Positions 13,295-64,000 of a stretch of 64,000 bases of DNA are shown one piece after another. Positions within the stretch are counted from its first letter, which is position 1. Each line of letters begins with the position of its first letter. Under the pieces are notes generated by a model, which was given only the letters and a program-made list of their open reading frames with translations, was not told the DNA's origin and did no database searches. The stretch spans positions 186,001-250,000 of IMG/VR virus record IMGVR_UViG_3300026521_000003, one strand, 5' to 3'. A program made the translations under genes and the position numbers.

Positions 13295-13295
13295 T

Positions 13296-15950: not shown

Positions 15951-15958
15951 TAATCTCC

Positions 15959-16789: not shown

Positions 16790-16791
16790 TT

Positions 16792-17376: not shown

Positions 17377-17388
17377 AATGATACCTCC

Positions 17389-18171: not shown

Positions 18172-18173
18172 TA

Positions 18174-18704
18174 TTAAACTCCCTCATTTGTTGAAATATC
18201 TCTTAAAATTAAAGAGAAATCTTTAAAAATATTTTTATCACCAGTTACACCAGTATATTTATCTATAATTATTGGTGAAGTTTGATCTCCCCAAGTACCG
18301 ATAGTATCTGTAAAAAGAATAATCTTTTCTGGATTAGCCATATCATCACCATCGTTTAAAATTATTGCTGCCCATCCAATAGTTGCATCAATTTCATAAA
18401 CAGTATCTAAAGCATCAACAGGTATTTTTTTAATTGTTTTTTCTTTAGTTAGTTCATCATAACTATATACGAATTGAAGATCTGCAACTTCAAAAACTTT
18501 TTTAGTTCCAAATGCATTTAATAATGTTTCCTCTGTAACTATATTGTATAAATCTTCTGTTGCTGGAATTCCACCATCAAAAAAGATAATTTTATTTCCA
18601 TCAACAGTAACATTTTTTGTTAAAGATGTACTTACATTATTAGAAACTACATTTCCAACGGGCATAAAGTGGTAACTAAGACCATAAAAATTTAAAACTT
18701 TCAT
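18174..18704 (-). CDS. Virion structural protein, module A paralogue 1
   Basis: PVDALD...IDATIGWAA...FTDTIGTW...FKDFSLILRD...EGV; late promoter upstream. Confidence 0.65.
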   Translation of the reverse strand: MKVLNFYGLSYHFMPVGNVVSNNVSTSLTKNVTVDGNKIIFFDGGIPATEDLYNIVTEETLLNAFGTKKVFEVADLQFVYSYDELTKEKTIKKIPVDALDTVYEIDATIGWAAIILNDGDDMANPEKIILFTDTIGTWGDQTSPIIIDKYTGVTGDKNIFKDFSLILRDISTNEGV

Positions 18705-31860: not shown

Positions 31861-31882
31861 TTAAGTAATATATTTGTATAAT
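31861..31882 (+). promoter_or_regulatory. TTAAG-N11-TATAAT early/middle promoter
   Basis: Same spacing recurs at 33953, 42071, 43459 and 59644. Confidence 0.55.
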
Positions 31883-31909
31883 AATAATAAACGTTTAAAG
31901 GTTTGTTAT

Positions 31910-36219: not shown

Positions 36220-36560
36220 TGAAAAAGATTTATTTTATACATGAAAATACTTCACCAATTAAGGTTGCCGGTGTATTTGTGCAGATCCCAACAGACTACG
36301 TGGTAACAGTAGGATTTATTAAAACAGAAGAAGAGATAGCACTTTCAATGGGTGATGAACCAAAAAATACAGTTTATATGTATAATGATAATATGGCTAG
36401 AGTTGAATTACATAATTTTTTACCGGGTATTGTTTTTGATAGCTATGAAGAAGGGTGTCGAGTTTTAGTTAAAATATTAAGTACTCGTATTAAATATGAT
36501 AAAGAAATTAATAAAACTTATCTTACATTATTGGATGAATTTCCAGAAGGAGTTTTATAA
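36219..36560 (+). CDS. Hypothetical protein, C-terminal PE-tag family
   Basis: Ends DEFPEGVL*. Confidence 0.7.
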   Translation: MKKIYFIHENTSPIKVAGVFVQIPTDYVVTVGFIKTEEEIALSMGDEPKNTVYMYNDNMARVELHNFLPGIVFDSYEEGCRVLVKILSTRIKYDKEINKTYLTLLDEFPEGVL

Positions 36561-36883
36561 TGTATAAAATAGGTGATAAAGTGTGGTTTTATACTTATGA
36601 TTCTGGATTACGAAAAGTCTCGATTATTAAGATAGAAGAAAATAATGTTATTTTAGAAAATGAAGATATTCTGCCTCCTGATTTACCTTTACGAGTTCCT
36701 AAAAAAGATATTTCTTTTTCTAAAGAACGTATAGAATTGTTAGCTTTCGCTGTTAATTATAAGAAAGGTTGGCTGAAGCGAGATATAGATAGAAGTATAG
36801 AAGATAATGATATTGAACAAATAAAATATCATAGGAAAATGATGGATTTATCTATTAAGGAGTTCCCAGAATTATGGGTTTGA
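36560..36883 (+). CDS. Hypothetical protein (SH3-like N-terminus), PE-tag family
   Basis: Starts YKIGDKVW; ends KEFPELWV*. Confidence 0.7.
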   Translation: MYKIGDKVWFYTYDSGLRKVSIIKIEENNVILENEDILPPDLPLRVPKKDISFSKERIELLAFAVNYKKGWLKRDIDRSIEDNDIEQIKYHRKMMDLSIKEFPELWV

Positions 36884-45501: not shown

Positions 45502-45741
45502 ATGAGTATTTTAGAAAAATCATTAGAAGAATTTATTTTTCCTTTTAGTAAATTGCGATTTGAGTTATTAACTTCACCATCAAAAAATAATATAATTCAA
45601 GCAGTAGAAACGGTTAAAAGATATTTTTATTCTAATGATTATCCACACGACAAAGATTTATATTTGGATGATTTAATTGCAATAAAAAATTATATTGAAA
45701 TTAATTATCCTATTAGTAAATTTCCAGAGTATTACATATGA
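45502..45741 (+). CDS. Hypothetical protein, C-terminal PE-tag family
   Basis: Ends SKFPEYYI*. Confidence 0.7.
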   Translation: MSILEKSLEEFIFPFSKLRFELLTSPSKNNIIQAVETVKRYFYSNDYPHDKDLYLDDLIAIKNYIEINYPISKFPEYYI

Positions 45742-46106
45742 AATATTTATGGGTGCAAAAAGGTGGTGGTGATTTTAAAATAGGTAAAGATATAACTGAA
45801 TGCAATCTGAAATTTAATCCTATAAAAATTAATGTGTCGATTGATGAAGATTTTCATAGTAATATAGAATTGCTAAAGTATTTACCTGCAGGTACTGATA
45901 CGGGATCAGGTAACTTTATTATAATGTATGTTGATACTATTGAAAAAGTACGAGTAAAATGGTATAAGTTAATTATATCTCATTATAATCATTTATTATG
46001 TTTAGGAGATTTGATTAATTTATCATCTGACTGGAGTAGTAAGATAAAAGCTATAGAAGAAGAAATAATAAATCATAGAAAGGGGTATCCAGAATTATGG
46101 GTATAA
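45738..46106 (+). CDS. Hypothetical protein, C-terminal PE-tag family
   Basis: Ends KGYPELWV*. Confidence 0.7.
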   Translation: MKYLWVQKGGGDFKIGKDITECNLKFNPIKINVSIDEDFHSNIELLKYLPAGTDTGSGNFIIMYVDTIEKVRVKWYKLIISHYNHLLCLGDLINLSSDWSSKIKAIEEEIINHRKGYPELWV

Positions 46107-50767: not shown

Positions 50768-51085
50768 ATGAAAAGAAAATGTGATATTTGTAATACTGAT
50801 TATTATGTTAAAAAATCTGATTTAGCTAGAGGATGGGGATTAACATGTAGTAAATCTTGTGCAGCTAAAAAAAGAGAAAGATCTAGGAATAACTATGATG
50901 AAACAACAGTTAAAATCAATAACCTTAAAAGAAAATTATGGTTTAACAAATATAGAAGTATTGAATTAGAACTCAGAAAGAAAAATAAAAATATGACCGA
51001 TATTGAAATTTGGGTTGAAATGTATAAGATTACAAATGATGAGATATTTTTATTTGATGAAATAAAAGATATTTTCATTTTTTAA
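50768..51085 (+). CDS. Zn-finger protein with C-terminal DIFIF tag
   Basis: CDIC...RGWG..CSKSC; ends MYKITNDEIFLFDEIKDIFIF*. Confidence 0.7.
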   Translation: MKRKCDICNTDYYVKKSDLARGWGLTCSKSCAAKKRERSRNNYDETTVKINNLKRKLWFNKYRSIELELRKKNKNMTDIEIWVEMYKITNDEIFLFDEIKDIFIF

Positions 51086-51673: not shown

Positions 51674-52175
51674 TAATGGTTTTATAAAGATGATAGGTAA
51701 AATGCAAAATATGTGGCAACCTACATATATAGATGAAGAATATGTCAAGGTTTATAAAGATATTTGGTTTGTTGATTCTAGTTATCCTTTTGAAATAACC
51801 AGAGATTATGAAATGGTTTTAAAAAATGAAGATGAAATTTTATCTCAAATTGGTTTATTACCAAATGCTCAAAAAATGGTACAAATGATGATGAATTCAA
51901 CGTACGGTAGTTACGGAGTACCATCGTCAAGATTATATGGAAACCCTTCTCATTATTATGCTCGAACGATGTCTACCAATAATTTTTTTAAAGAGTACAA
52001 ATATGAAGAAGCAGCTAAAGTAGCACAAAATGAAAAATTGATTGCTCACTATAATCATAAAATTAAAAAAGCACCAAAGAAGAAAGAACAAGTTGAACGT
52101 CTTACAAAAATTATTGAAATGCTCGAACAAGAAAACGAAGATTTTATCACAGAATATCCAGAAAGGTTTATTTAA
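51666..52175 (+). CDS. PE-tag protein carrying a PolB motif-B-like peptide
   Basis: Contains QKMVQMMMNSTYGSYG; ends TEYPERFI*. Confidence 0.7.
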   Translation: MDSNGFIKMIGKMQNMWQPTYIDEEYVKVYKDIWFVDSSYPFEITRDYEMVLKNEDEILSQIGLLPNAQKMVQMMMNSTYGSYGVPSSRLYGNPSHYYARTMSTNNFFKEYKYEEAAKVAQNEKLIAHYNHKIKKAPKKKEQVERLTKIIEMLEQENEDFITEYPERFI

Positions 52176-52642
52176 TGAATACATCAACAAATCATGTACA
52201 TACGATTAATACGATACCACTTTATCAAGCCCAACATCATCTAACACAAAAACACCAAAGTACTGGAAGAATCAAGCGTTCTTTTAATCTTGGTTCCTCT
52301 TTCCAAACCGGATATAAATATCGGGTATTAACACGATTTCCATTTAGTGTTTCTAGACATGAGGAACTTGATGAAGTAACAGTTTTTGATTTTTTTGACC
52401 GTATTACTTATCATCTTTGTGAAACGAGATTGGAAGCTGAAAAAATAAGATTGGAAGCTTTAGAAGAACATTATGATGAACAATATAAAAAATATTTAGC
52501 AGATACTTCTAAATTTAAGCGCAAATCGTATAAATTTAATGGGTATGTTTCAGTTGATGGTTTAAAGGCCAAAAGGTTACTTAATAGATACAAAACTGAA
52601 TTGAATAATTTGGAAAAGGATCATCCAGAATGGCTAATTTGA
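52175..52642 (+). CDS. PE-tag protein (paralogue of 53355-53813)
   Basis: FPF, RLEAEK.R; ends KDHPEWLI*. Confidence 0.7.
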   Translation: MNTSTNHVHTINTIPLYQAQHHLTQKHQSTGRIKRSFNLGSSFQTGYKYRVLTRFPFSVSRHEELDEVTVFDFFDRITYHLCETRLEAEKIRLEALEEHYDEQYKKYLADTSKFKRKSYKFNGYVSVDGLKAKRLLNRYKTELNNLEKDHPEWLI

Positions 52643-53342: not shown

Positions 53343-53354
53343 TAAGGTTTAAAT

Positions 53355-53813
53355 ATGAGTTTAAATTCACTTAATTCTAAAATCGTATCTAGTCTAGGAG
53401 TCCCACTTTCAAAGATTAGACCTTTGAATACAACAATCACATCAGCACCACCTACGGCATCATCGATGGTGATGGGAGTAGATGTAGCATCTATGTATCC
53501 AAGTAGTACTAGTTCTTATAATTCTGGTGGAAATTTAAATTTTGGCTCTTTAATAGATGTACCATATTTAGTTTCTAAAGATTTTCCATTTAAAATAAAA
53601 GTTATTTCAAAATCGGATATTAAAACTATTCAAAATAGTTTTAGTGATATGATTGATCTTATGAGTAAGTATGATGGATATGGCTCAAGATTAGAAGCTG
53701 AGAAACAGCGTATTAAAAAACTTATAGATGCCACCGTAGATATTAGTATAGTAAAAGAATTAGAAAAATCATTAGAAAACATTGAAGTAGATCATCCAGA
53801 GTGGCTAATTTAA
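53355..53813 (+). CDS. PE-tag protein carrying a PolB motif-A-like peptide
   Basis: Contains MVMGVDVASMYPS; FPF, RLEAEKQR; ends VDHPEWLI*. Confidence 0.7.
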   Translation: MSLNSLNSKIVSSLGVPLSKIRPLNTTITSAPPTASSMVMGVDVASMYPSSTSSYNSGGNLNFGSLIDVPYLVSKDFPFKIKVISKSDIKTIQNSFSDMIDLMSKYDGYGSRLEAEKQRIKKLIDATVDISIVKELEKSLENIEVDHPEWLI

Positions 53814-53836: not shown

Positions 53837-53844
53837 TATAAATA
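53837..53844 (+). promoter_or_regulatory. T4-type late promoter heading the DIFIF-tag array
   Basis: Exact TATAAATA 38 nt upstream of 53882. Confidence 0.6.
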
Positions 53845-53881: not shown

Positions 53882-54703
53882 ATGATTGATTTAGATTATA
53901 TTTTTGATGATGTTAAAAATAAGACAATAACAAAAAAAGAAGCGTATGAGTTAGTAAAAAATATTGGTGATAGTATGACATTTACTACGTCTAAACATAC
54001 TAGTACTGATGTGTATGTTGAAATAGCAAAAAAAATCCCTGATGATGATTTGATTGAGACTATGATAAATTCTCAAATAGAAAATTATCGTAGTAGTCAA
54101 GGGATATATAGATTGTTAGATTTAGCTTCAAAAACTTTTTTTGAAAAAAAGTGGGATGAAGCTATCAATCAACCCGGTGGTTATTATTTAAACTATTATA
54201 AGTCAAAGCATACTGATGGAGAAAAACTGTATTATTTATGGACTCATATTTTAAAGAAAAAACCGGCAGCAAAGAATTGGAAAGAAAAACTTAAACAGGG
54301 TATTTTAAGTCATCCTAATTGTCCACCAAAGATTACAAATAGACAATTAAGGAATTTAGATAATATACATATTATAGCTTTAAATAAAAATTTAGCATCT
54401 AATCCAAAGGCTCTAAAAGCTGTAGGTGATTATGCAGCAGTATTTAGACATGATGGTATATTTGAAAATCTTACAAGAAACAAATATGTTCCTTGGGAGA
54501 AAATTTCAGAAGTTGTTGATATGAAAAATCAAGTAAAAGCCATGATGACACCTTCTGTACCTGTAACGTTTAGAAGAAAAGCTGCAATATTAGAATTTTT
54601 TAGAAGAGAAGATACTCCTGATAAAGCGAGAGAGGTAATGTATAAAATTACTGGTGATGATGAATTTTTACCTAAAGAGGTACGAGACCTCTTTATTTTT
54701 TAA
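53882..54703 (+). CDS. Helical-repeat protein, DIFIF-tag family
   Basis: LRV-like HPNCP; ends MYKITGDDEFLPKEVRDLFIF*. Confidence 0.75.
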   Translation: MIDLDYIFDDVKNKTITKKEAYELVKNIGDSMTFTTSKHTSTDVYVEIAKKIPDDDLIETMINSQIENYRSSQGIYRLLDLASKTFFEKKWDEAINQPGGYYLNYYKSKHTDGEKLYYLWTHILKKKPAAKNWKEKLKQGILSHPNCPPKITNRQLRNLDNIHIIALNKNLASNPKALKAVGDYAAVFRHDGIFENLTRNKYVPWEKISEVVDMKNQVKAMMTPSVPVTFRRKAAILEFFRREDTPDKAREVMYKITGDDEFLPKEVRDLFIF

Positions 54704-54712
54704 GGATATATT

Positions 54713-56254
54713 ATGAGAAAAAATGCAATTCAAACTAAAGAAAATATACGAGAATGGGTAAAGAATCATTTAGATTCATTCCCTTTTAAAATGAGTATTG
54801 AAGAATATGATAATTTAACGGATGGATTAAAATCATTAATTGAAAATAAATTGATTTCTATTCATAATAAGCAATACCCTAATAAAACAAAAGATTCATG
54901 GAGACATGACTATAAATTTACTAAAACAGAATTAAATAAACTTAAAATTCCAGACCCGTTTTTACCTCCAAGTAGTTTAAAACGTATTGAAAGTGGGTTG
55001 ATTAAAGCTAGACAAATAGCTGAAGATAATAAACCTATTAAGTGGGTTGATATTAATGAACGTTTAAAAAAGAATTTTAAAAAATGGGTAGATGAATACG
55101 CTGAAACATTTGATGAAGACTTTCTTGGAAGATATTTTGATGATTTACCTGAAGATATAAAATTAGAATGGATTACACTAATGGGTAAAAAGTTTGGTTT
55201 AAAAACTCCAGGAGCATTAAAAAAAGGTTTTATTTCAGCAAAAGATATGATTGACCAAGTCCAACATATGAGAATTCCTAATAATATTCATAATGCTATA
55301 TTAGATGTATTGCCGGAATCAGCATTTTTACAAACTACTAATAAATCTGATATGAAAAACTGGGATGCAAAAGAACAAGTTGCTTTTACGAAATCATTAT
55401 CTCAAGAAGAATTAAAAGCAGCACGAGAAAATAGAAAAATTGATAAAAAGCGAGTAAAACTACTAGCTAAAGCTAGAACTATTAAAAGTTTAGAATCTTA
55501 TCAAGAACTTCTTTCAGATCCTCTATTTGATAGAGATATGCTTGAAACGATTATTAAACGTATGGAGCGAAAAACAGCTTTTGATAATGGTTGGGGAGAT
55601 CAAAATAAAAAAGAAATTCTGAAATTGATTGTTACTCATCCTTTCTTATCATATGAAGATTTAAAAAGAATAGAAAAAGTAAAAGCCCCAAATTATTATG
55701 CAGGTTCACAAAAAGAGTATGTTTCAAAAGAATTAAATACTGCTCTAGCATCTAAAAAAGATTTACCTGAAAGTGATCTAATGAAGATGGTAAAAAAGCA
55801 GCAATTCGATATTAAAGTAATTGCATCTAAAAGAGATTTAAAAGAAGAAAATAGAGAAATCTTGATTACATATACTATAAAGCATCACTCACATATGCCA
55901 GCTCAATTAGAAGAAGTATTTTCTAATTTAAAGATTAAAAAAGATAAGTATAAAAAGGAAATTATAGAAGCATTATATTCAAAATATATAGAGAAAAATT
56001 GGTTAGCTAACGGAATCCGATTCTTAGAGGTTGTAGATAAATATAATTGGCTGTCTGAAATTGATGAAGAATTAAAATCAAAAATAGCAAGATCATTAGT
56101 TAAGAACTATAAAGATAATAGGATTAGTCAAGATAGATTAATAAAAATGCTAAACAAAATATCTGCAGGTGCGGATTATTTAATGAAACTATATGAAGAA
56201 ACTGGCGATGACGCTTTCTTACCAACTGATGTTAAAGACATTTTTATATTTTAG
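54713..56254 (+). CDS. Helical protein, DIFIF-tag family
   Basis: Ends LYEETGDDAFLPTDVKDIFIF*. Confidence 0.75.
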   Translation: MRKNAIQTKENIREWVKNHLDSFPFKMSIEEYDNLTDGLKSLIENKLISIHNKQYPNKTKDSWRHDYKFTKTELNKLKIPDPFLPPSSLKRIESGLIKARQIAEDNKPIKWVDINERLKKNFKKWVDEYAETFDEDFLGRYFDDLPEDIKLEWITLMGKKFGLKTPGALKKGFISAKDMIDQVQHMRIPNNIHNAILDVLPESAFLQTTNKSDMKNWDAKEQVAFTKSLSQEELKAARENRKIDKKRVKLLAKARTIKSLESYQELLSDPLFDRDMLETIIKRMERKTAFDNGWGDQNKKEILKLIVTHPFLSYEDLKRIEKVKAPNYYAGSQKEYVSKELNTALASKKDLPESDLMKMVKKQQFDIKVIASKRDLKEENREILITYTIKHHSHMPAQLEEVFSNLKIKKDKYKKEIIEALYSKYIEKNWLANGIRFLEVVDKYNWLSEIDEELKSKIARSLVKNYKDNRISQDRLIKMLNKISAGADYLMKLYEETGDDAFLPTDVKDIFIF

Positions 56255-56262
56255 GTGATATT

Positions 56263-56736
56263 GTGGAAAATGATTACAAAATTTTATTAAATGATATTAA
56301 ACAAAGTGCTAAGGGTAAAATGGTTTTTAATTCAAAAGAGATTGTGAGTCAAGAAATGTTAAGTCCTCAATTAGCAAGAATAGCTATTGATTTAGTTACA
56401 TCAAGAAGAGGAAATGAAATCTATGAACTTGCTCCAGCTGTAGCCGTAGAGATCAATGACCCAATGGTTAAAGATCATATTTTAGATGAAATTCTTAAAA
56501 ACTATTTAAATAGGCAATCGGCACCAACAGCAATTATTGAATTTCTTATTAAAAATGCTAATAAATTAGACATTGGTCTAATGGAAAAAATTTATGATAC
56601 ATCGGATGAAGATTTTAAACTTTTTTTAAGAAATATAGGACAAAAGTTTAGAGAAGATTTTAATATAAAAGTATATAATGAAACTGGCGACAAATCATAT
56701 TTGCCAGAAGAAGTAGCAAGTATATTTATTTTTTAA
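56263..56736 (+). CDS. DIFIF-tag family protein
   Basis: Ends VYNETGDKSYLPEEVASIFIF*. Confidence 0.75.
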   Translation: MENDYKILLNDIKQSAKGKMVFNSKEIVSQEMLSPQLARIAIDLVTSRRGNEIYELAPAVAVEINDPMVKDHILDEILKNYLNRQSAPTAIIEFLIKNANKLDIGLMEKIYDTSDEDFKLFLRNIGQKFREDFNIKVYNETGDKSYLPEEVASIFIF

Positions 56737-56746
56737 AGGATAAAAA

Positions 56747-57631
56747 ATGTTTGAAATAGATGAAATGGTATATAAATTAAGAAGTATTATTGATTATGAT
56801 ACAGCGATAAAATATTATAACGATGAAATAAAAATAAAGTTAAATCATGACTTTCAATATGCAGAATTATTACGCAAATATTTAGATAAAACAACAGCTT
56901 TAAAATATTGGCAAATTGGATTTGATATAGTATCTGATATAGATTCTGAATCACTTTGGTCTGATTTTGTATATCTATTAAATTCTAAATTAGCTTCTAA
57001 AAATAAAAATATCCCTTGGTTAGCATCAATGGTAAGTAATCTATCAAAAAAAATTAAAGTTGGGCATAATCTTGAAACATTAATTATGTTATTTATTAAT
57101 GTTAATTTGTTCCGATTTTATATAAAAGAAGTTCATCCAAAGTTAGACCAAGATGATTCCTATTGGGCAATATCTTCAGCAAGTAAAAATATGAATTTAA
57201 ATAATATCGATGAATTAGTTGAAATAGCAGATTATAAGCTTTTTGAACGTATTTTAAACAATGATAAGGTAATGCCTGAAAATAAATTAAGATTATTAGA
57301 GTTGTTTTTAAGAAAAACTCAATTTGGTGTTAAAAATTTTAGTAGTCTGGATTTTTTATTTTTGCTTGAAAATCATCGTCGATGGTTTAATAATGTAAAT
57401 GTTATGAATTCAACAACAGCAGCATATAGAAATTTATTACCTGATGAAAGTGTTGCAAAATTATTAACTGAAATTATAATGGATGGAGATTTTACAGATG
57501 AATCTAAATACTTATGGCTATCAAGTATGTATCAATATAAATTAAATGATACAATGGGAGTAGCATTGTATGGATTAACTCAAGATGTTAAATATCTAAC
57601 AGATGAAATTAAAGATATATTTGTATTTTAA
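56747..57631 (+). CDS. DIFIF-tag family protein
   Basis: Ends LYGLTQDVKYLTDEIKDIFVF*. Confidence 0.75.
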   Translation: MFEIDEMVYKLRSIIDYDTAIKYYNDEIKIKLNHDFQYAELLRKYLDKTTALKYWQIGFDIVSDIDSESLWSDFVYLLNSKLASKNKNIPWLASMVSNLSKKIKVGHNLETLIMLFINVNLFRFYIKEVHPKLDQDDSYWAISSASKNMNLNNIDELVEIADYKLFERILNNDKVMPENKLRLLELFLRKTQFGVKNFSSLDFLFLLENHRRWFNNVNVMNSTTAAYRNLLPDESVAKLLTEIIMDGDFTDESKYLWLSSMYQYKLNDTMGVALYGLTQDVKYLTDEIKDIFVF

Positions 57632-57642
57632 GGATGTAAATT

Positions 57643-58158
57643 ATGAGATATAAAATAAGTAGTAAATTATTGTCGGATATTGTATCTAGTTATCAAGAGA
57701 GTATGAGATTGAGTGTTGGTCCAGAAATTAAATTTGTAGATGCAGAAATTGAACATCTTACATGGGATGTACTTTTAGAAGAACCTATTTTTCTAATTAA
57801 TTATTATGGCTTTGATGAAGATATTTATGATTCTGATGGGTTTTTCTTTTGTCGGGATATTATTGGTTTTTCGATGGATGATGAAAGTGAAAATGAATTA
57901 GAACGTAGATTTGGTGTAGATAATGAAAAAGTTGAAAAACTATTTATTGAACTTTTTAAAGAATTTATATCAAATAATAGTTTACCAACTATGGACATTA
58001 TAGAAGAAATTTATTATTACAATTATAATTTAATTAAGATAATGAATGATATTGAATTTTTTAATAAGTTAGAAAATGAAGAAAAAGAGTACCTTTATAA
58101 AGTTACGAATGATACTTTATTTTTACCAAAAGACGTAACTGATATATTTGTATTTTAA
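57643..58158 (+). CDS. DIFIF-tag family protein
   Basis: Ends LYKVTNDTLFLPKDVTDIFVF*. Confidence 0.75.
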   Translation: MRYKISSKLLSDIVSSYQESMRLSVGPEIKFVDAEIEHLTWDVLLEEPIFLINYYGFDEDIYDSDGFFFCRDIIGFSMDDESENELERRFGVDNEKVEKLFIELFKEFISNNSLPTMDIIEEIYYYNYNLIKIMNDIEFFNKLENEEKEYLYKVTNDTLFLPKDVTDIFVF

Positions 58159-58172
58159 TAAGAGGCTTAAAA

Positions 58173-58988
58173 ATGACTAGAAGAAAACCAAGAAGTTTGC
58201 GAGGTAGAGTAGCAAAGAGAGGATTTAGAGAATTATCATATGATGATAAATTAGATTATATAAATAATTCACATCAAGCAGTAAGTGAATTTAGATCATA
58301 TCCTGAAGATTTTTATAATTTTCTTGATAAGATTGATTGGCATAATGTAGATTTTTGTAAAGCTTTACGGAGACCAAAGGAATTAAAACTTCTTTTAGAT
58401 CAAAAACTTTTAGACCAAAAGGCTATCGATATAATATTTTTAAATACTCATTTCTTCCCTATCTTTAAAAATCTAATTAAATTAACTAGTGAATCTAATA
58501 GTGTTATTACTAAACGTATGCTGGAATTTTTAAAGCGAGATTTTGAAAGTCAAGAACCAAAGCATAAGTTATTTAAAAAATTAGATAAAGAGGGAATAAT
58601 AGATTGGGATGTTTTGAATATGCATAGTTATTTCCAAAGTTATATGAGTTATATTTTTGGAAACTATGAGTCTTATACAGATTTCGCCAATTATTTGCTA
58701 GATTCGGATAAAATTAGTTTAAATGGTGAAACTGAACGTAGTATTTGGCATACGTTTGATATTGATTTAATGATTAAATTATTAAAAAAAGATAGAAAAA
58801 TAGCAACTACCCCAAATGTCTTTTTAGATAATGGGAATATTGATGAATTTTTTGATAAATGGCCTAAAGATAAAGTACAGGAATTTATAAAACTAGTTAA
58901 TGATAGACCGGAACTTCAAAACTGTATTATTGAAAATGCATACATATCATTATTACCAGAAGAAGTAGCAAATATATTTGTTTTTTAA
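58173..58988 (+). CDS. DIFIF-tag family protein
   Basis: Ends SLLPEEVANIFVF*. Confidence 0.75.
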   Translation: MTRRKPRSLRGRVAKRGFRELSYDDKLDYINNSHQAVSEFRSYPEDFYNFLDKIDWHNVDFCKALRRPKELKLLLDQKLLDQKAIDIIFLNTHFFPIFKNLIKLTSESNSVITKRMLEFLKRDFESQEPKHKLFKKLDKEGIIDWDVLNMHSYFQSYMSYIFGNYESYTDFANYLLDSDKISLNGETERSIWHTFDIDLMIKLLKKDRKIATTPNVFLDNGNIDEFFDKWPKDKVQEFIKLVNDRPELQNCIIENAYISLLPEEVANIFVF

Positions 58989-58998
58989 AGGATAAAAA

Positions 58999-59637
58999 AT
59001 GTTTAAATGGGATAATTCAAAAGATTATGATGCAAATGTATTTGATTATATAGTCTATTCTGATCCAGAGAAATTGGTACAAACTTTTTATAAAGATTTA
59101 TCTCTAAGAGTTGAGTTTGAAACATCGGATCCAAATAGACATATGCCAATGGTTATTAGTACTAATTCAATAATTGAAACTTTATTGCAAGAATTTCATG
59201 ATGTTTTCACAGAACAAGAATTAATAAAGATGGTTAAATTATTATTTAAATTAGATTATGAAGATAAGTATTTTATTATCCGTACTTTAAATAGAAATTT
59301 TTTGCATAATGAACTAACTATTGATAATTATATGCTTTGTCGTATTATTGAAAAAGTAACACCTAGTAAAAATATATTTACATCTGATATTGTTGATTTG
59401 ATGCATAGGAGTAAGCAATTTATTATACCTTATTTAACAGCATTTAAATATCGATTGTCCAATCATGATAAACATTTTCTTTATACTGAATTTACTGAAG
59501 ATTTTTCTGGTATGTTTGATAAAAAAATAACATACTGGATTATGGATAATATTGATGGTATTAGTAAAATGGTTATAGATTCTGGAGAAGAACTCATTTA
59601 TATACCAAAAGAAGTTAGAGAAATTTTTATTTTTTAA
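58999..59637 (+). CDS. DIFIF-tag family protein
   Basis: Ends SGEELIYIPKEVREIFIF*. Confidence 0.75.
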   Translation: MFKWDNSKDYDANVFDYIVYSDPEKLVQTFYKDLSLRVEFETSDPNRHMPMVISTNSIIETLLQEFHDVFTEQELIKMVKLLFKLDYEDKYFIIRTLNRNFLHNELTIDNYMLCRIIEKVTPSKNIFTSDIVDLMHRSKQFIIPYLTAFKYRLSNHDKHFLYTEFTEDFSGMFDKKITYWIMDNIDGISKMVIDSGEELIYIPKEVREIFIF

Positions 59638-59685
59638 GAGAAATTAAGGATATATTTAATATAATTAAAAATAAGAGGAATTAAA

Positions 59686-60393
59686 ATGAGAACGGAAATA
59701 GAAATACTTGCAGAAATTGAATCAGGTAAGATTACAATAACTGATGCATTAGAAGAAGTTCATGAAACCGGTGCATACTTACTAATACAAAAAATTGCTA
59801 ATATGGAATTGACTAAATCCGAAAGATTATTATTAATATCTCTTATACCACAAGTAGATGATGTCTTGAGTCTTAAAAATTTCTTTTTAACTTTAAAAAG
59901 TCATGATGAAATAAAATTATTTTTAGAAGAATGTAATAAATCAAATATTAGTACAAGTATATATTATGCTCTTATGATACGGAATGATATAGATAAAAAA
60001 ATCTACTTTCGTCCTATAATTGATGCCCTTGCGGGAAGAAGCCAAGAATTTGTGGGGTTGATAAAGAAACTGATAAAAAAAATAGATAATATTTTATTAT
60101 CTGATATTGAATATCTTTATAAAAATGCTGCAAGAAGGGATTTTGCTAATATTATCAACGAACATATATCAATTTTTTCAGAGGATATCATCAAGTACAT
60201 TTTTGGAATTGTAAAGGATATGGAAGATAAAAATCCTCCAGTTTCAAGACTATTACTTCATGCTTTAGATGTTCAAATTATGGACAATCCAAGAAAATAT
60301 AGTTTTGAAGATGAATTTAAAATGTATATGTATGAATTTACTGGAAATGATGAATACTTGCCAGACGATATAAAAACGATTTTTATATATTAA
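59686..60393 (+). CDS. DIFIF-tag family protein
   Basis: Ends MYEFTGNDEYLPDDIKTIFIY*; TTAAG-N11-TATAAT upstream. Confidence 0.75.
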   Translation: MRTEIEILAEIESGKITITDALEEVHETGAYLLIQKIANMELTKSERLLLISLIPQVDDVLSLKNFFLTLKSHDEIKLFLEECNKSNISTSIYYALMIRNDIDKKIYFRPIIDALAGRSQEFVGLIKKLIKKIDNILLSDIEYLYKNAARRDFANIINEHISIFSEDIIKYIFGIVKDMEDKNPPVSRLLLHALDVQIMDNPRKYSFEDEFKMYMYEFTGNDEYLPDDIKTIFIY

Positions 60394-60403
60394 AGGGGGT
60401 TTA

Positions 60404-61075
60404 GTGTTATCTAATAATAAAATTAAATTTTATAATGAAAACATACGTAAACCCCTAGAACTTCTTGGTTTTAACTCTATTCCAAGAGGTGAAACTTACA
60501 ATGAATTTTCTAAAGGTCGTAATTATAAATATAATGCGTTGATGCATATTTCTGTTCAAGTAGATTTTGAAAAATTATTATTTAAATATCGTCTTAGCTT
60601 TCCGTGGTATAGTAATTTTTCAACTATTCCAATTGCATATAAAATACTACTTTTACCTAAAAGAGAAATAGTTGTAGAATTATCAAAAGAGAATTATCAA
60701 CAAGAATTAGAAAATATTTTTTCCGAAATTGTGGACCAATTAGAAAAAAATAAAAAAGAATTTGATATTATGATTCGAGAAAAATTAAATGAAGTAGATG
60801 AAAATAGTATAGCTAAATTATTTACACCTATCAATACACCAATACTACTAAATTATTTAGATTTAGAATATACAGATTATATCAAAATTATTTTTAGTTT
60901 AAGAAAAAGATTAAAGAATTATACTGAAAAAATAACTATTCTTTTTATGCATAACATGTCTAAAAAGGGATTGAGACTTTCAACTTCTGATTTAGAATTA
61001 TTAGAAACTATTGAGTATAATAGTTCTATAAAATTTTCTCAACTTGAGGAACTTAAATCTATTTTTATATATTAA
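60404..61075 (+). CDS. DIFIF-tag family protein (degenerate tag)
   Basis: Ends QLEELKSIFIY*. Confidence 0.7.
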   Translation: MLSNNKIKFYNENIRKPLELLGFNSIPRGETYNEFSKGRNYKYNALMHISVQVDFEKLLFKYRLSFPWYSNFSTIPIAYKILLLPKREIVVELSKENYQQELENIFSEIVDQLEKNKKEFDIMIREKLNEVDENSIAKLFTPINTPILLNYLDLEYTDYIKIIFSLRKRLKNYTEKITILFMHNMSKKGLRLSTSDLELLETIEYNSSIKFSQLEELKSIFIY

Positions 61076-61084
61076 AGGTACATT

Positions 61085-62593
61085 ATGATACTAAAATCAA
61101 TGAAAGTTTATGATAAAAAATGTTTATTAGAAAATGATCAGTTAGAATCCAGTATTGTAGATAAACTGGCTAATGATAGATCAATCACTATTCGATATTG
61201 GGCTGTTTCTCATAAAAATATTAGTAGTCAGAGTTTATCTAGAGCATTGTTATCAAAAAAGAATTTTGATAGAGAACAGATTTTATCTTCAATTTTATAT
61301 AATAAAAAATTAGATTTTGAAACAAGATTAACATTCGTAGAAAAATATCTTCATAATATTGAAGTAGTACTAGATTTTTATGATATAGTTTATAATACCT
61401 CTTTAGAGGAACGAAATCAAATAATAGAAATCTTTGTTAATCGATTATTATTAAAGCAGACTTTAAAATATGAATATTTTAAATATATTCCAAGTTATAT
61501 AAATTTAGCGTTAGATGAATATTCTAAGATTTATGAAATATTTTTAAAGCGTGCACCATCAATTTTGTTAGTTACGCAAAATGGTTTTGAAAGGGACAAT
61601 CAAACATTTTCTAAAACTCAAATTAAGCAAATTTTTAAAGCTGTCGTGGATAATAATAAAAATTATGGATGTTTAGTATATGATTTAGGACCTACATATT
61701 TAAAATCAATCCCATCACATTTTTTAAATTATGTGATAAAGACAAAAAATATAACAAAAAAAGAAATTGAACTTTTTTTAATGAATGAAAATTTTAACGA
61801 AAAAATGATAATGAAAATCATTAATACTGTTGATTATGATGTACTACTAGAAATTGCTAGATCATCTATTTTAACAGAAGATATTGAACAACGGATTTAT
61901 AATAAAATAAAAACTCATGATATTGACAGTACTTTGTTCTATGCATTATTATCGAATCCAACTCATAATTTTGAAAGGTCATATGATTTTATGGTAATGC
62001 ATCATACTTATTTTACGATATCTTCAATTATGAAGTCTATTATAAGTTCAAATTACCCTGTTACATTAATTGATAAAGTCATTAATGAAATCAAAATAGT
62101 GCATCCTTTAACAGCACTAGGTTTATATATAGTAGAAAATAATACATCAGAAATATATTTAAATAAAATTTGGGATAAGTATTGGGATGGTCAAATCATT
62201 AGTTATACACCCAGATATAGAGCTTATAATAGGTTTGATAATAGTATAAAAGATACTTCATATATTATTCAGTTGATGATTACAGAATCATCACTAAGTT
62301 ATAAATTTGCGTATAAATATTATAAAGAGACTAATGAAGTTAGATATTGTAGGAATATATCGGAGTATAATTCTGATGAAATAGATAGTATATGGTCAAG
62401 TGTTAGAGACACTAATATTTTTGAATATTCTAAGAGTTATTATAATGATGCATATTATATTGAAGATGTAAAAGTTGCGTTATTAGAATATGCAAAAGAG
62501 AATAATTTATCAAAATATATAGTTGATGAATATCAGATGTTTAATAATACAAAATATATTGCTAAGGAAGCATTAGACTTATTTGAATTTTAG
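61085..62593 (+). CDS. LRV/HEAT-like repeat protein, DIFIF-tag family
   Basis: LANDRSITIRYWAVSHKN; ends NNTKYIAKEALDLFEF*. Confidence 0.7.
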   Translation: MILKSMKVYDKKCLLENDQLESSIVDKLANDRSITIRYWAVSHKNISSQSLSRALLSKKNFDREQILSSILYNKKLDFETRLTFVEKYLHNIEVVLDFYDIVYNTSLEERNQIIEIFVNRLLLKQTLKYEYFKYIPSYINLALDEYSKIYEIFLKRAPSILLVTQNGFERDNQTFSKTQIKQIFKAVVDNNKNYGCLVYDLGPTYLKSIPSHFLNYVIKTKNITKKEIELFLMNENFNEKMIMKIINTVDYDVLLEIARSSILTEDIEQRIYNKIKTHDIDSTLFYALLSNPTHNFERSYDFMVMHHTYFTISSIMKSIISSNYPVTLIDKVINEIKIVHPLTALGLYIVENNTSEIYLNKIWDKYWDGQIISYTPRYRAYNRFDNSIKDTSYIIQLMITESSLSYKFAYKYYKETNEVRYCRNISEYNSDEIDSIWSSVRDTNIFEYSKSYYNDAYYIEDVKVALLEYAKENNLSKYIVDEYQMFNNTKYIAKEALDLFEF

Positions 62594-62603
62594 TGAGGAT
62601 TAA

Positions 62604-62996
62604 ATGAAACTACATGAATTAAATGAAAAGGTTAAAATTGTTAATAAAAGTGATTTAGATATGTTTAGCAATTGGGATGCTAGATTTTGGATTGATATGG
62701 ACGATTATATAGACACAGTAAAAAAAGAAGGTGTAGAAACGGCAATTACACTTGTATCAAAAACAATCAAGAAAATAGGTGAAGAAAATTATATCACCTT
62801 AAAAAATCTTGCAGATAAAGAGAAATTTGGTGTACCAGAGTTTAATAAAGCGATAGATACCAAACATTTAAAAAGTATTGATGCTTCAAAAATAGTCATT
62901 CTTATGGATTTAGTTGATCGACGTGCTAAGATACGTAAAAGTAAATTGGAATCTGAACTTAAAAAGATTCAAAAACAAATTGATATGCTGGGGTAA
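62604..62996 (+). CDS. Hypothetical protein with MKLxELNE N-terminus
   Basis: GAGG SD; no C-terminal tag. Confidence 0.65.
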   Translation: MKLHELNEKVKIVNKSDLDMFSNWDARFWIDMDDYIDTVKKEGVETAITLVSKTIKKIGEENYITLKNLADKEKFGVPEFNKAIDTKHLKSIDASKIVILMDLVDRRAKIRKSKLESELKKIQKQIDMLG

Positions 62997-62999
62997 AAA

Positions 63000-63191
63000 A
63001 TGAAAATAAAAGATTTAAATGAAATGTTTTTAAGTGGTAATCTAGACGCTGCTCTGGATTGGGATGAAACTCCTTCAGATGTTAAGGATATGGATGGTAA
63101 TCCAAGTAAATTACCTATTCAAATACCTAAAAAATTTAAAGTAAAATATAAGAAAAAACGAAACAAAAAAAATGACACAAAAGCAGTATGA
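63000..63191 (+). CDS. Small protein with MKIxDLNE N-terminus and basic tail
   Basis: Follows 62604-62996 directly. Confidence 0.55.
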   Translation: MKIKDLNEMFLSGNLDAALDWDETPSDVKDMDGNPSKLPIQIPKKFKVKYKKKRNKKNDTKAV

Positions 63192-63840
63192 TCGAATAGT
63201 TGAACGTTCTAAAAGTTCAAGGTATTCTACAAGACAAAAAGTAGCAAAAGATCCGGATACACCTATTGAAATTGTAAACAATTTAATTCTTGATGATGAT
63301 TCTAGAGTTTCATTAGTTGCCGCATTAAATGGTAACATTGATGAGAGTACATTAGGACTTCTTTTAGAATCATACGATATATCTTCAAATATTTTTATTG
63401 AGATATATAAAAATAGAAATTTTAAAGAAAAATGGATCCCAAATTTTATCCGTATTTTGAAATCGCATAATATTTCTCCAATGTTTATAATTTATTCTAA
63501 TCGCTTTTTACAAAATATGGATGATTGGTTGAAAACTTTTGATGAAGTAATTAAAGTTCAAGAGGAAGTTGGTAGTTTAATTACTGTTTCTATCTCAAAT
63601 AAATTTTTTGTTGTATTTGTAAGAAAAGTAGGATATAATAAAAACATTTTTAAGTCTAAGGCTATATTAAAGATTTTAGATACGTTCGGCGAATTATTTC
63701 ATAATGTTTCTGGTGGTATATTTAGTGCTATATTAGAAAATATTGATGATGATGATCAGGAAGTAAGAAAAAAGATTTATGAAATTACTAATGATTCAAA
63801 ATACTTACCACAAATATTACAAGATGTATTTATATTCTAG
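63172..63840 (+). CDS. LRV-repeat protein, DIFIF-tag family
   Basis: RQKVAKDPDTPIEIVNNLILDDDSRVSLVAALN; ends IYEITNDSKYLPQILQDVFIF*. Confidence 0.75.
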   Translation: MTQKQYDRIVERSKSSRYSTRQKVAKDPDTPIEIVNNLILDDDSRVSLVAALNGNIDESTLGLLLESYDISSNIFIEIYKNRNFKEKWIPNFIRILKSHNISPMFIIYSNRFLQNMDDWLKTFDEVIKVQEEVGSLITVSISNKFFVVFVRKVGYNKNIFKSKAILKILDTFGELFHNVSGGIFSAILENIDDDDQEVRKKIYEITNDSKYLPQILQDVFIF

Positions 63841-63849: not shown

Positions 63850-64000
63850 ATGAAAATAAATCAAAAAGCAAAACAAAAAGAGAGAACGAGACTATTAAAA
63901 TACATTAAAGATGATAATATTGATAGTGTAAAAGAGTTTTTATTGACCTATACTTATGATGACTTCGATAAGTTATTTAGGTATGCTTGTGAGAATGGTG
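63850..64000 (+). CDS. Partial ORF running off the window, possibly ankyrin-like
   Basis: MKINQKAKQKERTRLLKYIKDDNIDSVKEFLL...LFRYACENG; AGGA SD. Confidence 0.55.
   Translation, partial: MKINQKAKQKERTRLLKYIKDDNIDSVKEFLLTYTYDDFDKLFRYACENG

What the first reader, a model, noticed from the sequence alone, without database searches (positions are those of the whole stretch)
53882..63840. Array of 11 helical/repeat proteins sharing a second, ~20-aa C-terminal tag (DIFIF)
Seen: 11 of 13 consecutive ORFs (157-513 aa, divergent bodies) end in a motif with consensus Y..T(G/N)D..(Y/F)LP.(E/D)(V/I).(D/x)IF(I/V)(F/Y)*. A twelfth copy is fused to an unrelated Zn finger at 50768-51085, which shows the tag is modular. 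The array follows an exact TATAAATA at 53837. Some bodies have LRV/HEAT-like repeats, and the next, partial ORF looks ankyrin-like. Known: T4-family sliding-clamp-binding motifs are C-terminal aromatic peptides (T4 gp43 SLDFLF, RB69 gp43 LFDMFDF, recalled), and LDLFEF at 62593 resembles them. Poxvirus ANK/F-box proteins provide a precedent for a variable binder plus a constant adaptor tail. Inference: a bank of substrate-recognition adaptors plugging into one shared machine (clamp, protease or packaging/ejection apparatus), using a different address from the PE tag.
Basis: partly seen in the sequence, partly recalled or inferred. Interest (0 to 1): 0.88.

Follow-up and report, generated by a model that had tools for sequence, protein, structure and literature searches.

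The report
Phage binder-protein bank sharing one C-terminal tail
A 290-kb phage from deep-sea vents devotes about a tenth of its genome to at least 42 otherwise unrelated repeat-scaffold proteins that all end in the same 12-residue tail, which most likely plugs many different binders into one shared, still unidentified, partner.

Summary
The window is part of a 289,880-bp vent phage contig. The 11 tagged ORFs are the first third of a 34-kb, single-strand array of 38 tagged genes. With 4 strays, at least 42 genes carry the tag.

The tail is (F/Y)LPx(E/D)(V/I)x(D/S)(I/L)F(I/V)F. It is always followed by a stop and never occurs internally. It is conserved as peptide, with synonymous codon variation. 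It is absent from cellular genomes and present in related vent and aquatic phages of 25-42% GC.

The bodies show no pairwise sequence similarity and fall into several fold classes:
- an LRV/HEAT-like alpha-solenoid (one member modelled);
- ankyrin;
- a Zn ribbon;
- an unassigned tandem Cys/Leu repeat in relatives.

The tail is therefore modular. TATAAATA behaves as a real T4-late-type promoter and precedes the array, and a T4-type terminase follows it.

Best reading: a late-expressed bank of binders sharing one docking helix. The partner is unknown; I rank virion or prohead loading first. The clamp idea is weak: T4's own tails, fetched here, read (S/T)LDFL(F/Y/L), which is a different register and not strictly terminal. 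A structural end-cap is the main rival.

The parts
53837..53844 (+). TATAAATA, a T4-late-type promoter-like motif 38 nt ahead of the first array gene
   Evidence: Exact match. 6 of the window's 28 copies lie in the 3% of intergenic DNA, all 22-40 nt upstream of a gene start and correctly oriented (binomial P 1.6e-4). It is conserved at the same place in strain 2 (L007 9956). A further copy precedes the array's restart after a TnpB insertion (L006 8328).
50768..51085 (+). 105-aa protein: N-terminal CxxC...CxxxC Zn-ribbon-like part, a basic linker, and the 35-aa tag module ending DIFIF
   Evidence: matrix score 29.0. No Pfam family. Present in strain 2 (L023) but absent at the syntenic place in the more distant relative L008.
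53882..54703 (+). Array gene 1, 273 aa, alpha-solenoid body, tail ..FLPKEVRDLFIF
   Evidence: AF2 mean pLDDT 88, all-helical. The tail helix (265-270) lies in a block averaging pLDDT about 78; the last 3 residues average 54. Shape search gives TM 0.5-0.65 to LRV/HEAT clusters. The ortholog P0003 is 44% identical overall; its last 39 aligned residues are 32/39 identical.
54713..56254 (+). Array gene 2, 513 aa, tail ..FLPTDVKDIFIF
   Evidence: score 32.5. No Pfam or PHROG family. No match in GenBank phages.
56263..56736 (+). Array gene 3, 157 aa, GTG start, tail ..YLPEEVASIFIF
   Evidence: score 31.8.
56747..57631 (+). Array gene 4, 294 aa, tail ..YLTDEIKDIFVF
   Evidence: score 29.2.
57643..58158 (+). 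Array gene 5, 171 aa, tail ..FLPKDVTDIFVF
   Evidence: score 32.8. A relative, P0018, carries the same body type with tail ..FIPKEAQDIFIF.
58173..58988 (+). Array gene 6, 271 aa, short-form tag (no Y..T.D part), tail ..LLPEEVANIFVF
   Evidence: score 29.2.
58999..59637 (+). Array gene 7, 212 aa, short-form tag, tail ..YIPKEVREIFIF
   Evidence: score 30.2.
59686..60393 (+). Array gene 8, 235 aa, tail ..YLPDDIKTIFIY
   Evidence: score 25.3.
60404..61075 (+). Array gene 9, 223 aa, GTG start, degenerate tag ..SQLEELKSIFIY
   Evidence: score 17.0.
61085..62593 (+). Array gene 10, 502 aa, degenerate tag ..YIAKEALDLFEF
   Evidence: score 17.8. This is the weakest window member.
62604..62996 (+). Untagged 130-aa gene inside the array, conserved at the same place in relatives
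   Evidence: Its ortholog precedes the tagged genes in L011. No family or fold match.
63000..63191 (+). Untagged 63-aa gene inside the array (acidic N-terminal part, basic tail)
   Evidence: no family.
63172..63840 (+). Array gene 11, 222 aa, tail ..YLPQILQDVFIF
   Evidence: score 28.3. The only homolog found is its strain-2 ortholog.
63850..64000 (+). Start of array gene 12 (188 aa in full, weakly ankyrin-like, ends ..LLPDDIKDMFVF at window-equivalent 64416); the array continues to window-equivalent 87800

Best explanation
The tail is a lineage-specific, strictly C-terminal docking peptide. Its core is an N-capped amphipathic helix, LPx(E/D)(V/I)x(D/S)(I/L)F(I/V)F-COOH. About 20 residues of body-type-specific helix come before it. 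It has been joined to at least 42 otherwise unrelated soluble scaffold proteins, mostly acidic, that carry no enzyme domain. The genes form one tightly packed, co-directional operon-like array with a median gap of 10 nt, where each stop codon runs into the next Shine-Dalgarno site. A T4-late-type promoter motif stands in front and a T4-type terminase follows. The proposed working is that each variable body binds a different target and the constant tail couples all of them to one shared partner. I rank the candidate partners as follows, as overall probabilities.
- The assembling head (scaffold or capsid interior, or the capsid surface), about 0.25. The binders would then travel with the virion and act in the next host, following the logic of T4 internal proteins with their shared capsid-targeting sequence, or of encapsulin cargo-loading peptides.
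- A protease or unfoldase, as adaptor or degron, about 0.15.
- A sliding clamp or replisome hub, about 0.1.
Shown: the tail's existence, terminal position, peptide-level conservation, modularity, clade restriction and array structure. Inferred: late timing, docking itself, and the partner.
For: Scale and discreteness. 39 tagged ORFs were found on the + strand between contig 236768 and 273800, and 3 more at about 281-283.6 kb. The matrix scores are bimodal with nothing in between. All 37 strong matches are terminal and none is internal.
Peptide-level selection. Codons vary synonymously at conserved positions. F at -3 is 39/39, F/Y at -1 is 39/39, and [ILVM] at -4 is 39/39.
Modularity. No body pair reaches BLASTP E 1e-3. 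Ankyrin passes the Pfam cutoff in 4 members. The one member modelled is an LRV/HEAT-like solenoid. There is one Zn-ribbon fusion. Relatives P0022 and P0025 carry an FxCxxNxLxSL-type tandem repeat that Pfam does not name.
Clade-wide conservation. A profile of the last 36 aa found 38 proteins at E below 1e-3 among 1.84 billion. 37 of the 38 matches end exactly at the protein's C-terminus, and many come from other contigs. Arrays or single copies occur in relatives of 25-42% GC, including contigs of 155 and 261 kb.
Absent from cells. A strict DNA pattern found only 4 singletons in 185,579 species genomes, three of them chance and one at the low-GC end of a MAG contig.
Ortholog pair. 44% identity overall, but 32 of the last 39 aligned residues are identical.
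Late-type promoter. TATAAATA is enriched in intergenic DNA ahead of gene starts (P 1.6e-4). It stands before array gene 1 and again before the array's restart (L006 8328).
T4-type neighbours. Terminase_6N lies just downstream, and a gp25 baseplate gene is in the window.
Precedent. [quoted passage not shown]
Transcripts. Metatranscriptomic libraries hold small exact contigs from the array, one bridging genes 1 and 2. This is weak evidence.
Against: No partner was identified and no binding was tested. In the only confident model the tail helix lies in a block averaging pLDDT about 78, and shape matches extend to residue 273. It may therefore pack on the solenoid as a terminal repeat rather than hang free. 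Between two strains at 86% nucleotide identity the last 22 residues change as often as the bodies (17% against 15%), so only a handful of positions are constrained. The proteins are mostly acidic (median pI 5.4), unlike the basic T4 internal proteins. The tag is C-terminal, not N-terminal like the T4 capsid-targeting sequence. Late timing rests on analogy with the T4 promoter consensus. Only about 122 kb of the 290-kb genome could be read.
Confidence: 0.5

Rival explanations
1. Structural end-cap. The tail, with the helix before it, is the last and slowest-evolving repeat unit of a solenoid. It shields the hydrophobic end of the repeat stack and has no external partner. The family would be very old paralogues whose bodies have diverged beyond recognition.
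For: The tail has the helix-start signature LPxE-hydrophobic, which also matches leucine-rich-repeat units in the profile search of solved chains. I also judge it similar to LRV repeat starts, by eye. In the AF2 model the tail helix is moderately confident and lies within the stretch that superposes on longer LRV/HEAT solenoids. In the ortholog pair the conserved part covers about 45 aa, not just the tail. Repeat proteins generally need caps (general knowledge).
Against: The same 11-12 residues end ankyrin proteins, solenoids, a Zn-ribbon protein with a basic linker, and tandem-repeat proteins in relatives; one cap is unlikely to fit all of these. The aromatic residues at -3 and -1 are invariant and the motif is always at the very end (0 of 37 internal), which is more than a cap needs. 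The last 3 residues are low-confidence in both models.
Confidence: 0.2
2. Protease link. The tail either recruits an AAA+ protease or unfoldase of host or phage, so that the bodies deliver bound targets for degradation, or it acts as a C-terminal degron that keeps the binders short-lived.
For: The tail is an exposed hydrophobic, aromatic extreme C-terminus with a fixed end position. Binder-type bodies fit adaptor logic. Terminal peptides are the usual address for ClpX, ClpA, Lon, FtsH and Tsp, and SspB docks on ClpX by a C-terminal peptide (general knowledge, not tested here).
Against: The tail does not resemble known tags such as ..LAA or the SspB tail (from memory, not tested). No protease gene was seen in the 122 kb read. 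Late expression (inferred) fits host takeover poorly.
Confidence: 0.15
3. Sliding-clamp or replisome docking. The tail binds a phage gp45-like clamp or host DnaN, as the T4 polymerase, gp33 and gp55 tails do.
For: The phage has T4-type features: TATAAATA promoters, a T4-type terminase N-domain and a gp25 baseplate gene. The T4 tails fetched here (..SLDFLFG..SLDFLYEAND..TLDFLL) share acid-x-F-hydrophobic-aromatic near the end with D-I-F-I-F.
Against: The register differs by one residue (D-F-L-F against D-I-F-I-F). The T4 motif need not be terminal (gp55 has 4 more residues and gp43 has 1), whereas this tail always is. T4 tails score -22 to -39 on the tail matrix. The bacterial QL[SD]LF motif needs Q at position 1, but here -6 is K (19), R (5) or Q (5) of 39. 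More than 40 clamp ligands expressed together would compete with the replisome. Late expression is inferred.
Confidence: 0.1
4. Effectors aimed at a eukaryote, with a minimal F-box/PRANC-like tail. The phage's host would be an animal epibiont or symbiont, and the proteins would mimic substrate receptors of ubiquitin ligases, as poxvirus ANK-PRANC proteins and the phage WO eukaryotic association module do.
For: The sequence is found in 'epibiont' and hydrothermal vent metagenomes. Ankyrin bodies carry a short C-terminal helix beginning LPxE-hydrophobic, like F-box helix 1 (the F-box consensus is from memory). PRANC and ankyrin are documented in phage WO (PMC5062602).
Against: No F-box or PRANC hit appears among the 25 Pfam families listed for the 39 members. 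The module is shorter than an F-box and ends after one helix. I saw no signal peptide in the listed N-termini (by eye), and no secretion route is known. The genome looks like that of a large lytic T4-like myovirus.
Confidence: 0.04
5. Nucleic-acid-level element. The U-rich last codons, the stop and the Shine-Dalgarno site form a translational-coupling or recombination cassette, and the peptide is a by-product.
For: The junctions are stereotyped..TTT-ATT-TTT-TAA/TAG merges into AGGA or GGAG, with a median gap of 10 nt.
Against: Synonymous variation at every conserved position. Conservation reaches 12-20 codons upstream. The tail is kept in relatives of 38-42% GC, in the last array gene and in a lone minus-strand copy.
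Confidence: 0.01

Closest known systems
T-even phage internal proteins (IPI, IPII, IPIII, Alt) with a shared capsid-targeting sequence
   Same: Unrelated, fast-diversifying proteins of a T4-type phage share only a short terminal address peptide. They are made late and are thought to be an arsenal against host defences (PMC3012670).
   Different: The T4 address is N-terminal, about 10 aa long, and is removed by the prohead protease; here it is C-terminal and 12-35 aa long. T4 has a handful of such genes; this phage has at least 42. Virion location is not shown here. These proteins are mostly acidic.
Poxvirus, Orientia and phage-WO ankyrin proteins with a C-terminal PRANC / F-box-like domain
   Same: A multigene family of repeat-scaffold binders with a short constant C-terminal helical adaptor, and a helix start of LPxE-hydrophobic.
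   Different: No Pfam F-box or PRANC match among the families listed. The module ends after one short helix. The host is a bacterium with no ubiquitin system. The bodies include non-ankyrin classes.
T4-family clamp-binding tails of gp43, gp33 and gp55, (S/T)LDFL(F/Y/L)
   Same: A short acidic-aromatic peptide at or near the C-terminus, shared by functionally different proteins of one phage, that docks them on one hub.
   Different: Different register and consensus, and not strictly terminal in T4. In T4 it is carried by replication and transcription enzymes, not by repeat scaffolds.
Encapsulin cargo-loading peptides and scaffolding-protein C-terminal capsid-binding helices (P22 gp8, HK97 protease tail)
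   Same: Short C-terminal peptides that load varied cargo into HK97-fold shells (general knowledge).
   Different: No sequence resemblance to those peptides that I know of (not tested), and no evidence here of shell binding.
LRV / HEAT and ankyrin repeat proteins of bacteria and phages
   Same: The body of array gene 1 superposes on LRV/HEAT clusters, some of them viral and some from Campylobacterota (TM 0.5-0.65). Four members are Pfam ankyrin.
   Different: Pfam LRV models do not match any member tested. None of those families is known to carry this tail.

Membership tests
T4-type clamp-binding tail | Consensus (S/T)LDFL(F/Y/L) at or near the C-terminus | tested here: not met
   T4 gp43, gp55 and gp33 tails were fetched from AF158101 and score -25, -39 and -22 on the tail matrix. 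The tail here is D(I/L)F(I/V)F, one residue out of register.
T4-type clamp-binding tail | The same motif on the phage's own polymerase and late-transcription factors, and binding to a gp45-like clamp | not tested
   Those genes were not in the roughly 122 kb of the contig that could be fetched. Binding cannot be tested with these tools.
Bacterial beta-clamp-binding motif QL[SD]LF | Conserved Gln at position 1, then L-x-L-F | tested here: not met
   Position -5 is D/S/N/E. Position -6 is K (19), R (5) or Q (5) of 39.
F-box / PRANC | Match to the Pfam F-box, F-box-like or PRANC models; a three-helix module of about 40 aa | tested here: not met
   None appears among the 25 families listed for the 39 members at E up to 0.1 (28 families matched; 3 were not shown). 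The module ends after one short helix.
Ankyrin repeat proteins (bodies) | Pfam Ank models above the gathering score | tested here: met
   Met for 4 members beyond the window: L004:10012-10461 (Ank_2 36.9 bits), L006:10856-11554 (Ank_2 44.8), L006:14272-15024 (Ank_2 28.6) and L006:5616-6101 (Ank_4 29.9). The window's partial ORF from 63850 is below the cutoff (17.3 bits). No hit for the 11 window genes.
LRV / HEAT repeat proteins (bodies) | Pfam LRV or HEAT model match | tested here: not met
   No LRV or HEAT hit for the members tested at E up to 0.1-1.
LRV / HEAT repeat proteins (bodies) | Alpha-solenoid fold superposable on LRV/HEAT proteins | tested here: inconclusive
   The AF2 model of gene 1 (pLDDT 88) gives TM 0.58, 0.53 and 0.52 to LRV clusters in the ESM Atlas. 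Foldseek E-values are weak: 0.01-0.07 in AFDB and 0.03 or more in PDB. Only one member was modelled well.
T4 internal proteins / capsid-targeting sequence | An N-terminal address of about 10 aa cleaved by the prohead protease; proteins found inside the head | tested here: not met
   The address here is C-terminal. Cleavage and virion location cannot be tested. The shared logic (diverse bodies, one address, late promoter) is met.
Encapsulin-type cargo-loading peptide | A C-terminal peptide that binds the inner face of an HK97-fold shell | not testable with these tools
   The C-terminal position is met. The capsid gene was not located and no co-folding tool is offered.

The most novel reading that the evidence does not exclude
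The tail is a new kind of phage cargo or docking address. A single 12-residue C-terminal helix would load or tether more than 40 different binder proteins (ankyrin, LRV/HEAT-like solenoid and others) onto one phage machine, most plausibly the assembling head. The virion would then deliver a ready-made panel of host-protein binders into the next cell. This would be a phage counterpart of the poxvirus ANK-adaptor families and a greatly expanded C-terminal version of the T4 internal-protein system. It would also be a natural plug-in tag for loading foreign proteins.
Probability: 0.25. Interest if true: 0.9.

Novelty: new variant of a known kind. Interest (0 to 1): 0.74.

Why it matters
If the tail is a docking address, one short peptide organises about a tenth of a jumbo phage's coding capacity. 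Finding its partner would give roles to more than 40 orphan genes at once, and to their relatives in vent and aquatic phages. It would show that phages, like poxviruses and giant viruses, build large banks of repeat-scaffold binders on a constant adaptor. It could also give a compact natural tag for directing proteins to a phage structure or a bacterial machine. Even under the end-cap reading, the finding documents an unusually large, sequence-orphan binder family. That family shows gene turnover between strains, and a TnpB element and a channel gene have inserted into it.

Tried and rejected
1. Pfam and PHROGs on the window's array genes gave nothing significant.
2. Megablast and tblastn against GenBank phages found no match.
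3. Word-indexed protein searches restricted to the tail region, or using a whole member, returned only the phage itself and near strains, because the index needs several shared words.
4. The tail profile against solved structures gave no significant hit, only leucine-rich-repeat look-alikes at E 0.2-1.
5. The AF2 model of an ankyrin member was too poor to use (pLDDT 55).
6. Sigma-70 and terminator scans matched chance (153 found against 153.7 expected; 6 against 3.8). One hairpin overlapping the tail of gene 1 is not conserved in strain 2.
7. I walked the genome to look for the phage's clamp, polymerase, gp33, gp55 or head genes. Upstream I found a ligase, ThyX, a GyrB-like protein and large unnamed proteins. 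Downstream I found a split terminase, a DEDDh exonuclease and DUF4116; in strain 2 I found a RecA/UvsX with an intein and a FlgK-like gene. There was no clamp, protease, PDZ or TPR candidate. One look-up was lost to a wrong start codon.
8. I tested whether the tail is under stronger constraint than the bodies between strains at 86% identity. It is not, overall.
9. RNA libraries gave only a few small contigs, too sparse to map transcript ends.
10. The embedded untagged 130-aa gene, considered as a possible hub, has no family or fold match.

Full report
SOURCE AND SCOPE
The window is contig positions 186001-250000 of IMGVR_UViG_3300026521_000003 (= Ga0256828_1000001). The contig is 289,880 bp and about 27% GC. 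Public runs holding the sequence are labelled hydrothermal vent and epibiont metagenomes. The genome has T4-type features: a gp25 baseplate wedge, sheath and baseplate families, and a T4-type terminase N-domain. It also carries auxiliary genes: a ThrRS fragment, an Apyc1-like hydrolase, Tpt1, an NMN adenylyltransferase, RNase HII and an NAD ligase. Genes use Shine-Dalgarno sites. A Campylobacterota host is a guess from habitat, GC content and ribosome-binding sites; it is not shown. I could read contig positions of about 166.8-289.3 kb, except for an 832-nt gap.

THE OBSERVATION
- The chance expectation for [ILVM]F[IVLE][FY]-stop among the window's 256 ORFs is 0.17; 12 are seen (P about 8e-19).
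- A matrix of the last 12 residues separates the tags from every other ORF end, with an empty gap between. The 12 window tags score 17-34, all 39 score 7.9-36.8, and other ends score under 3.
- All 37 strong matches in 93 kb and six frames are followed by a stop.
- Conserved residues are written with varying synonymous codons. The peptide is what is conserved, not a DNA or RNA element.

EXTENT
- It continues past the window to window-equivalent 87800: 38 tagged genes on one strand over 34 kb.
- The Zn-ribbon gene lies 2.8 kb upstream.
- Three more tagged genes lie 7-10 kb downstream, one of them on the minus strand.
- The total is at least 42 genes, about 11% of the genome.
- Gaps between array genes have a median of 10 nt, and the stop codon usually runs into the next Shine-Dalgarno site.

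Several untagged genes interrupt the array:
- the genes at 62604-63191;
- a Gly_transporter/UPF0126 membrane protein (PF03458, E 9e-36);
- a TnpB/IS605 element on the opposite strand;
- probably two small untagged genes in the unread gap, judging from strain 2.

THE TAIL
Counts from the C-terminus, out of 39:

| Position | Residues |
|---|---|
| -1 | F 37, Y 2 |
| -2 | I/V/L 38 |
| -3 | F 39 |
| -4 | I/L/V/M 39 |
| -5 | D 23, S/N/E/T for most of the rest |
| -6 | K/R/Q 29 |
| -7 | V/I/L 35 |
| -8 | E/D 33 |
| -10 | P 29 |
| -11 | L 27 |
| -12 | F/Y 25 |

Upstream of this core there are two forms.
- The form with the Y..T(G/N/E)D signature occurs on 19 members. The one member modelled, gene 1, has an alpha-solenoid body.
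- The other form reads roughly ..D.RV(I/V)..L......(D/F)LLP. It is found on the ankyrin-type members and their look-alikes.

The universal unit is therefore the last 11-12 residues, and the transferable module is about 30-35 residues. LPxE-hydrophobic is a common helix start, and AF2 models residues 265-270 of gene 1 as a short helix.

THE BODIES
- No pair of the 39 bodies reaches BLASTP E 1e-3, and searches of a whole member find only strain-level orthologs.
- Gene 1 folds with confidence (pLDDT 88) as an alpha-solenoid. It superposes best on LRV/HEAT clusters, some viral and some from Campylobacterota. Foldseek support is weak, and Pfam LRV models do not match.
- Four members pass the Pfam ankyrin cutoff.
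- One member has a Zn ribbon.
- Relatives P0022 and P0025 carry tandem FxCxxNxLxSL-type repeats that Pfam does not name.
- The proteins have a median pI of 5.4 and negative hydropathy. I saw no signal peptide in the listed N-termini, and no enzyme domain was found.

A very old common solenoid origin for part of the family cannot be excluded.

DISTRIBUTION
- A profile of the last 36 residues found 38 proteins at E below 1e-3 among 1.84 billion. 37 of the 38 matches end exactly at the C-terminus, and many come from other contigs. Their consensus is ..HPNCPxELKxxLYExTGDExFLPxE(V/A)xDIF(I/V/L)F.
- A strict back-translated pattern hit no other IMG/VR contig.
- In JGI metagenomes the same pattern hit several related contigs:
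  - a syntenic strain at 86% identity (109,916 bp);
  - a lineage with an array of 7 genes and the variant tail ..AKD(I/V)FLF (L022);
  - contigs of 155 kb and 261 kb at 38-42% GC with one or two copies.
- In 185,579 species genomes there were only 4 single hits. Three look like chance; one real tail sits at the low-GC end of a contig binned as Rhodoferax.

The tail therefore belongs to a phage clade, not to cells. Gene content differs even between the two strains: a 233-aa ankyrin member is missing in strain 2 (L056).

CONSTRAINT
- In the more distant ortholog of gene 1, overall identity is 44%, but 32 of the last 39 aligned residues are identical. The only DNA similarity left in that gene is its 3' end.
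- Between the two close strains the last 22 residues change as often as the bodies (17% against 15%). Constraint therefore sits on a few positions.

EXPRESSION
- TATAAATA is not enriched overall (28 found, 32.5 expected).
- However, 6 of the 28 copies lie in the 3% of intergenic DNA. All 6 are 22-40 nt upstream of a start and correctly oriented (P 1.6e-4).
- One copy precedes array gene 1 and is conserved in strain 2. Another precedes the array's restart after the TnpB insertion.
- By analogy with T4, where TATAAATA is the late promoter read by gp55 (general knowledge), I infer late expression.
- Two metatranscriptomic libraries hold a few exact small contigs from the array, one spanning the junction of genes 1 and 2, and none from the upstream block. 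This is too sparse to prove transcription.

MECHANISM
The anatomy has four elements: many unrelated binder scaffolds, one strictly terminal conserved helix with invariant aromatic residues, a single co-regulated array, and restriction to one phage clade. This is the anatomy of 'variable receptor plus constant adaptor' systems. I put 0.5 on the tail being a docking address for one shared partner.

- Virion or prohead (about 0.25 overall). Reasons: the late-type promoter, the adjacent T4-type terminase, and the precedent of T-even internal proteins that share only a capsid-targeting sequence (PMC3012670).
- Protease adaptor or degron (0.15). Any terminal hydrophobic peptide invites this reading.
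- Clamp (0.1). This is weak. T4's own tails, fetched here, read ..SLDFLFG..SLDFLYEAND and ..TLDFLL. They are in a different register, are not strictly terminal, and are carried by enzymes.
- Structural end-cap (0.2). This is the serious rival. The tail helix is moderately confident in the model and lies within the stretch that superposes on longer solenoids. Against it, one cap would have to serve ankyrin, solenoid, Zn-ribbon and tandem-repeat bodies, and a cap would not need an invariant extreme terminus.
- F-box/PRANC-like effector reading (0.04). The epibiont habitat and the LPxE start prompt it. It lacks HMM support among the families listed, a secretion route, and a full-length module.
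- Nucleic-acid-level explanation. The codon data exclude it.

NOVELTY
I found no family, structure or paper describing this tail. It is a new variant of a known design: a terminal address or adaptor on diverse proteins. It is unusual for its copy number, its C-terminal position in a T4-like phage, and its spread across fold classes.

Noticed in passing
window 1515-53813 (25 + strand ORFs, e.g. 36539-36883, 45720-46106, 52118-52642, 53346-53813): A second C-terminal tag. 25 mostly small ORFs end in (Y/F/H)PE plus three residues, e.g. YPELWV, FPELLI, HPEWLI. P is nearly always CCA and E is GAA. The tag also occurs in relatives (L008, L028, L032). It shares the P-E helix-start look of the longer tail and may be a short cousin of it. 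I did not test whether it is peptide-level or partly an RNA or overlap constraint.
   Followed up: partly
L006 7018-8226, minus strand (contig 265791-266999; window-equivalent about 79.8-81.0 kb): A TnpB / IS605 OrfB (Cas12f-like) gene is inserted in the array on the opposite strand (Pfam E 1.8e-18 and 9.5e-15). The array restarts after it behind its own TATAAATA.
   Followed up: partly
L004 9370-9987 (contig 254077-254694): A membrane protein of the Gly_transporter / UPF0126 family (PF03458, E 9e-36) sits inside the array without the tail. This is an unusual auxiliary gene for a phage.
   Followed up: partly
L006 16421-20552 and L016 11368-12153 (contig about 275.2-280.2 kb): The T4-type large terminase appears split. 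A 202-aa piece has the Terminase_6N domain. It is followed by a 711-aa ORF with DUF7487, REase and Mom-like domains, a 435-aa ORF, and an ORF with a weak intein-splicing match. Intein or homing-endonuclease invasion is likely.
   Followed up: no
window 31874-32800: A metallo-beta-lactamase-fold hydrolase; the batch Pfam scan of the window's ORFs includes an Apyc1 (anti-Pycsar) match (PF23023, E 1.4e-12), probably this gene, though the scan does not name the member. It is a candidate counter-defence gene. Next to it (29390-30622) is a 410-aa threonyl-tRNA synthetase core.
   Followed up: no
L051 3129-4259 (strain 2 contig Ga0256837_1000041, record about 69.4-70.6 kb): A phage-borne flagellar rod/hook-type protein (FlgK_D1 E 2e-17, Flg_bbr_C E 3e-14, Flg_bb_rod E 2e-8). 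In L034 there is also a RecA/UvsX-like gene carrying an intein.
   Followed up: no
window 54673-54695: A 9-bp stem-loop followed by a T-run overlaps the tail codons of array gene 1 (KEVRDLFIF). It depends on the unusual CTC Leu codon. It is probably not conserved in strain 2, whose tail has Ile (DIF) at that position; the strain-2 DNA was not inspected. It is probably fortuitous.
   Followed up: partly
L019 3807-3947 (JAXHOO010000017.1, a MAG labelled Rhodoferax, contig end): A perfect tail (..YEETKDEKYLPKEVRDIFVF) on a 46-codon ORF, in a low-GC stretch at the end of an otherwise high-GC bacterial contig. It could be a mis-binned phage fragment, a chimeric assembly or an integrated remnant.
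   Followed up: no
window 12449-18704, minus strand: Alternating paralogous ORF pairs have conserved C-terminal ends (..DHIDKIDYLDS.. and ..KDFS..RD.S..EGV). They lie next to an 884-aa Big_9/cadherin-like protein. This is probably a tail-fibre or adhesin cassette with duplicated modules.
   Followed up: no
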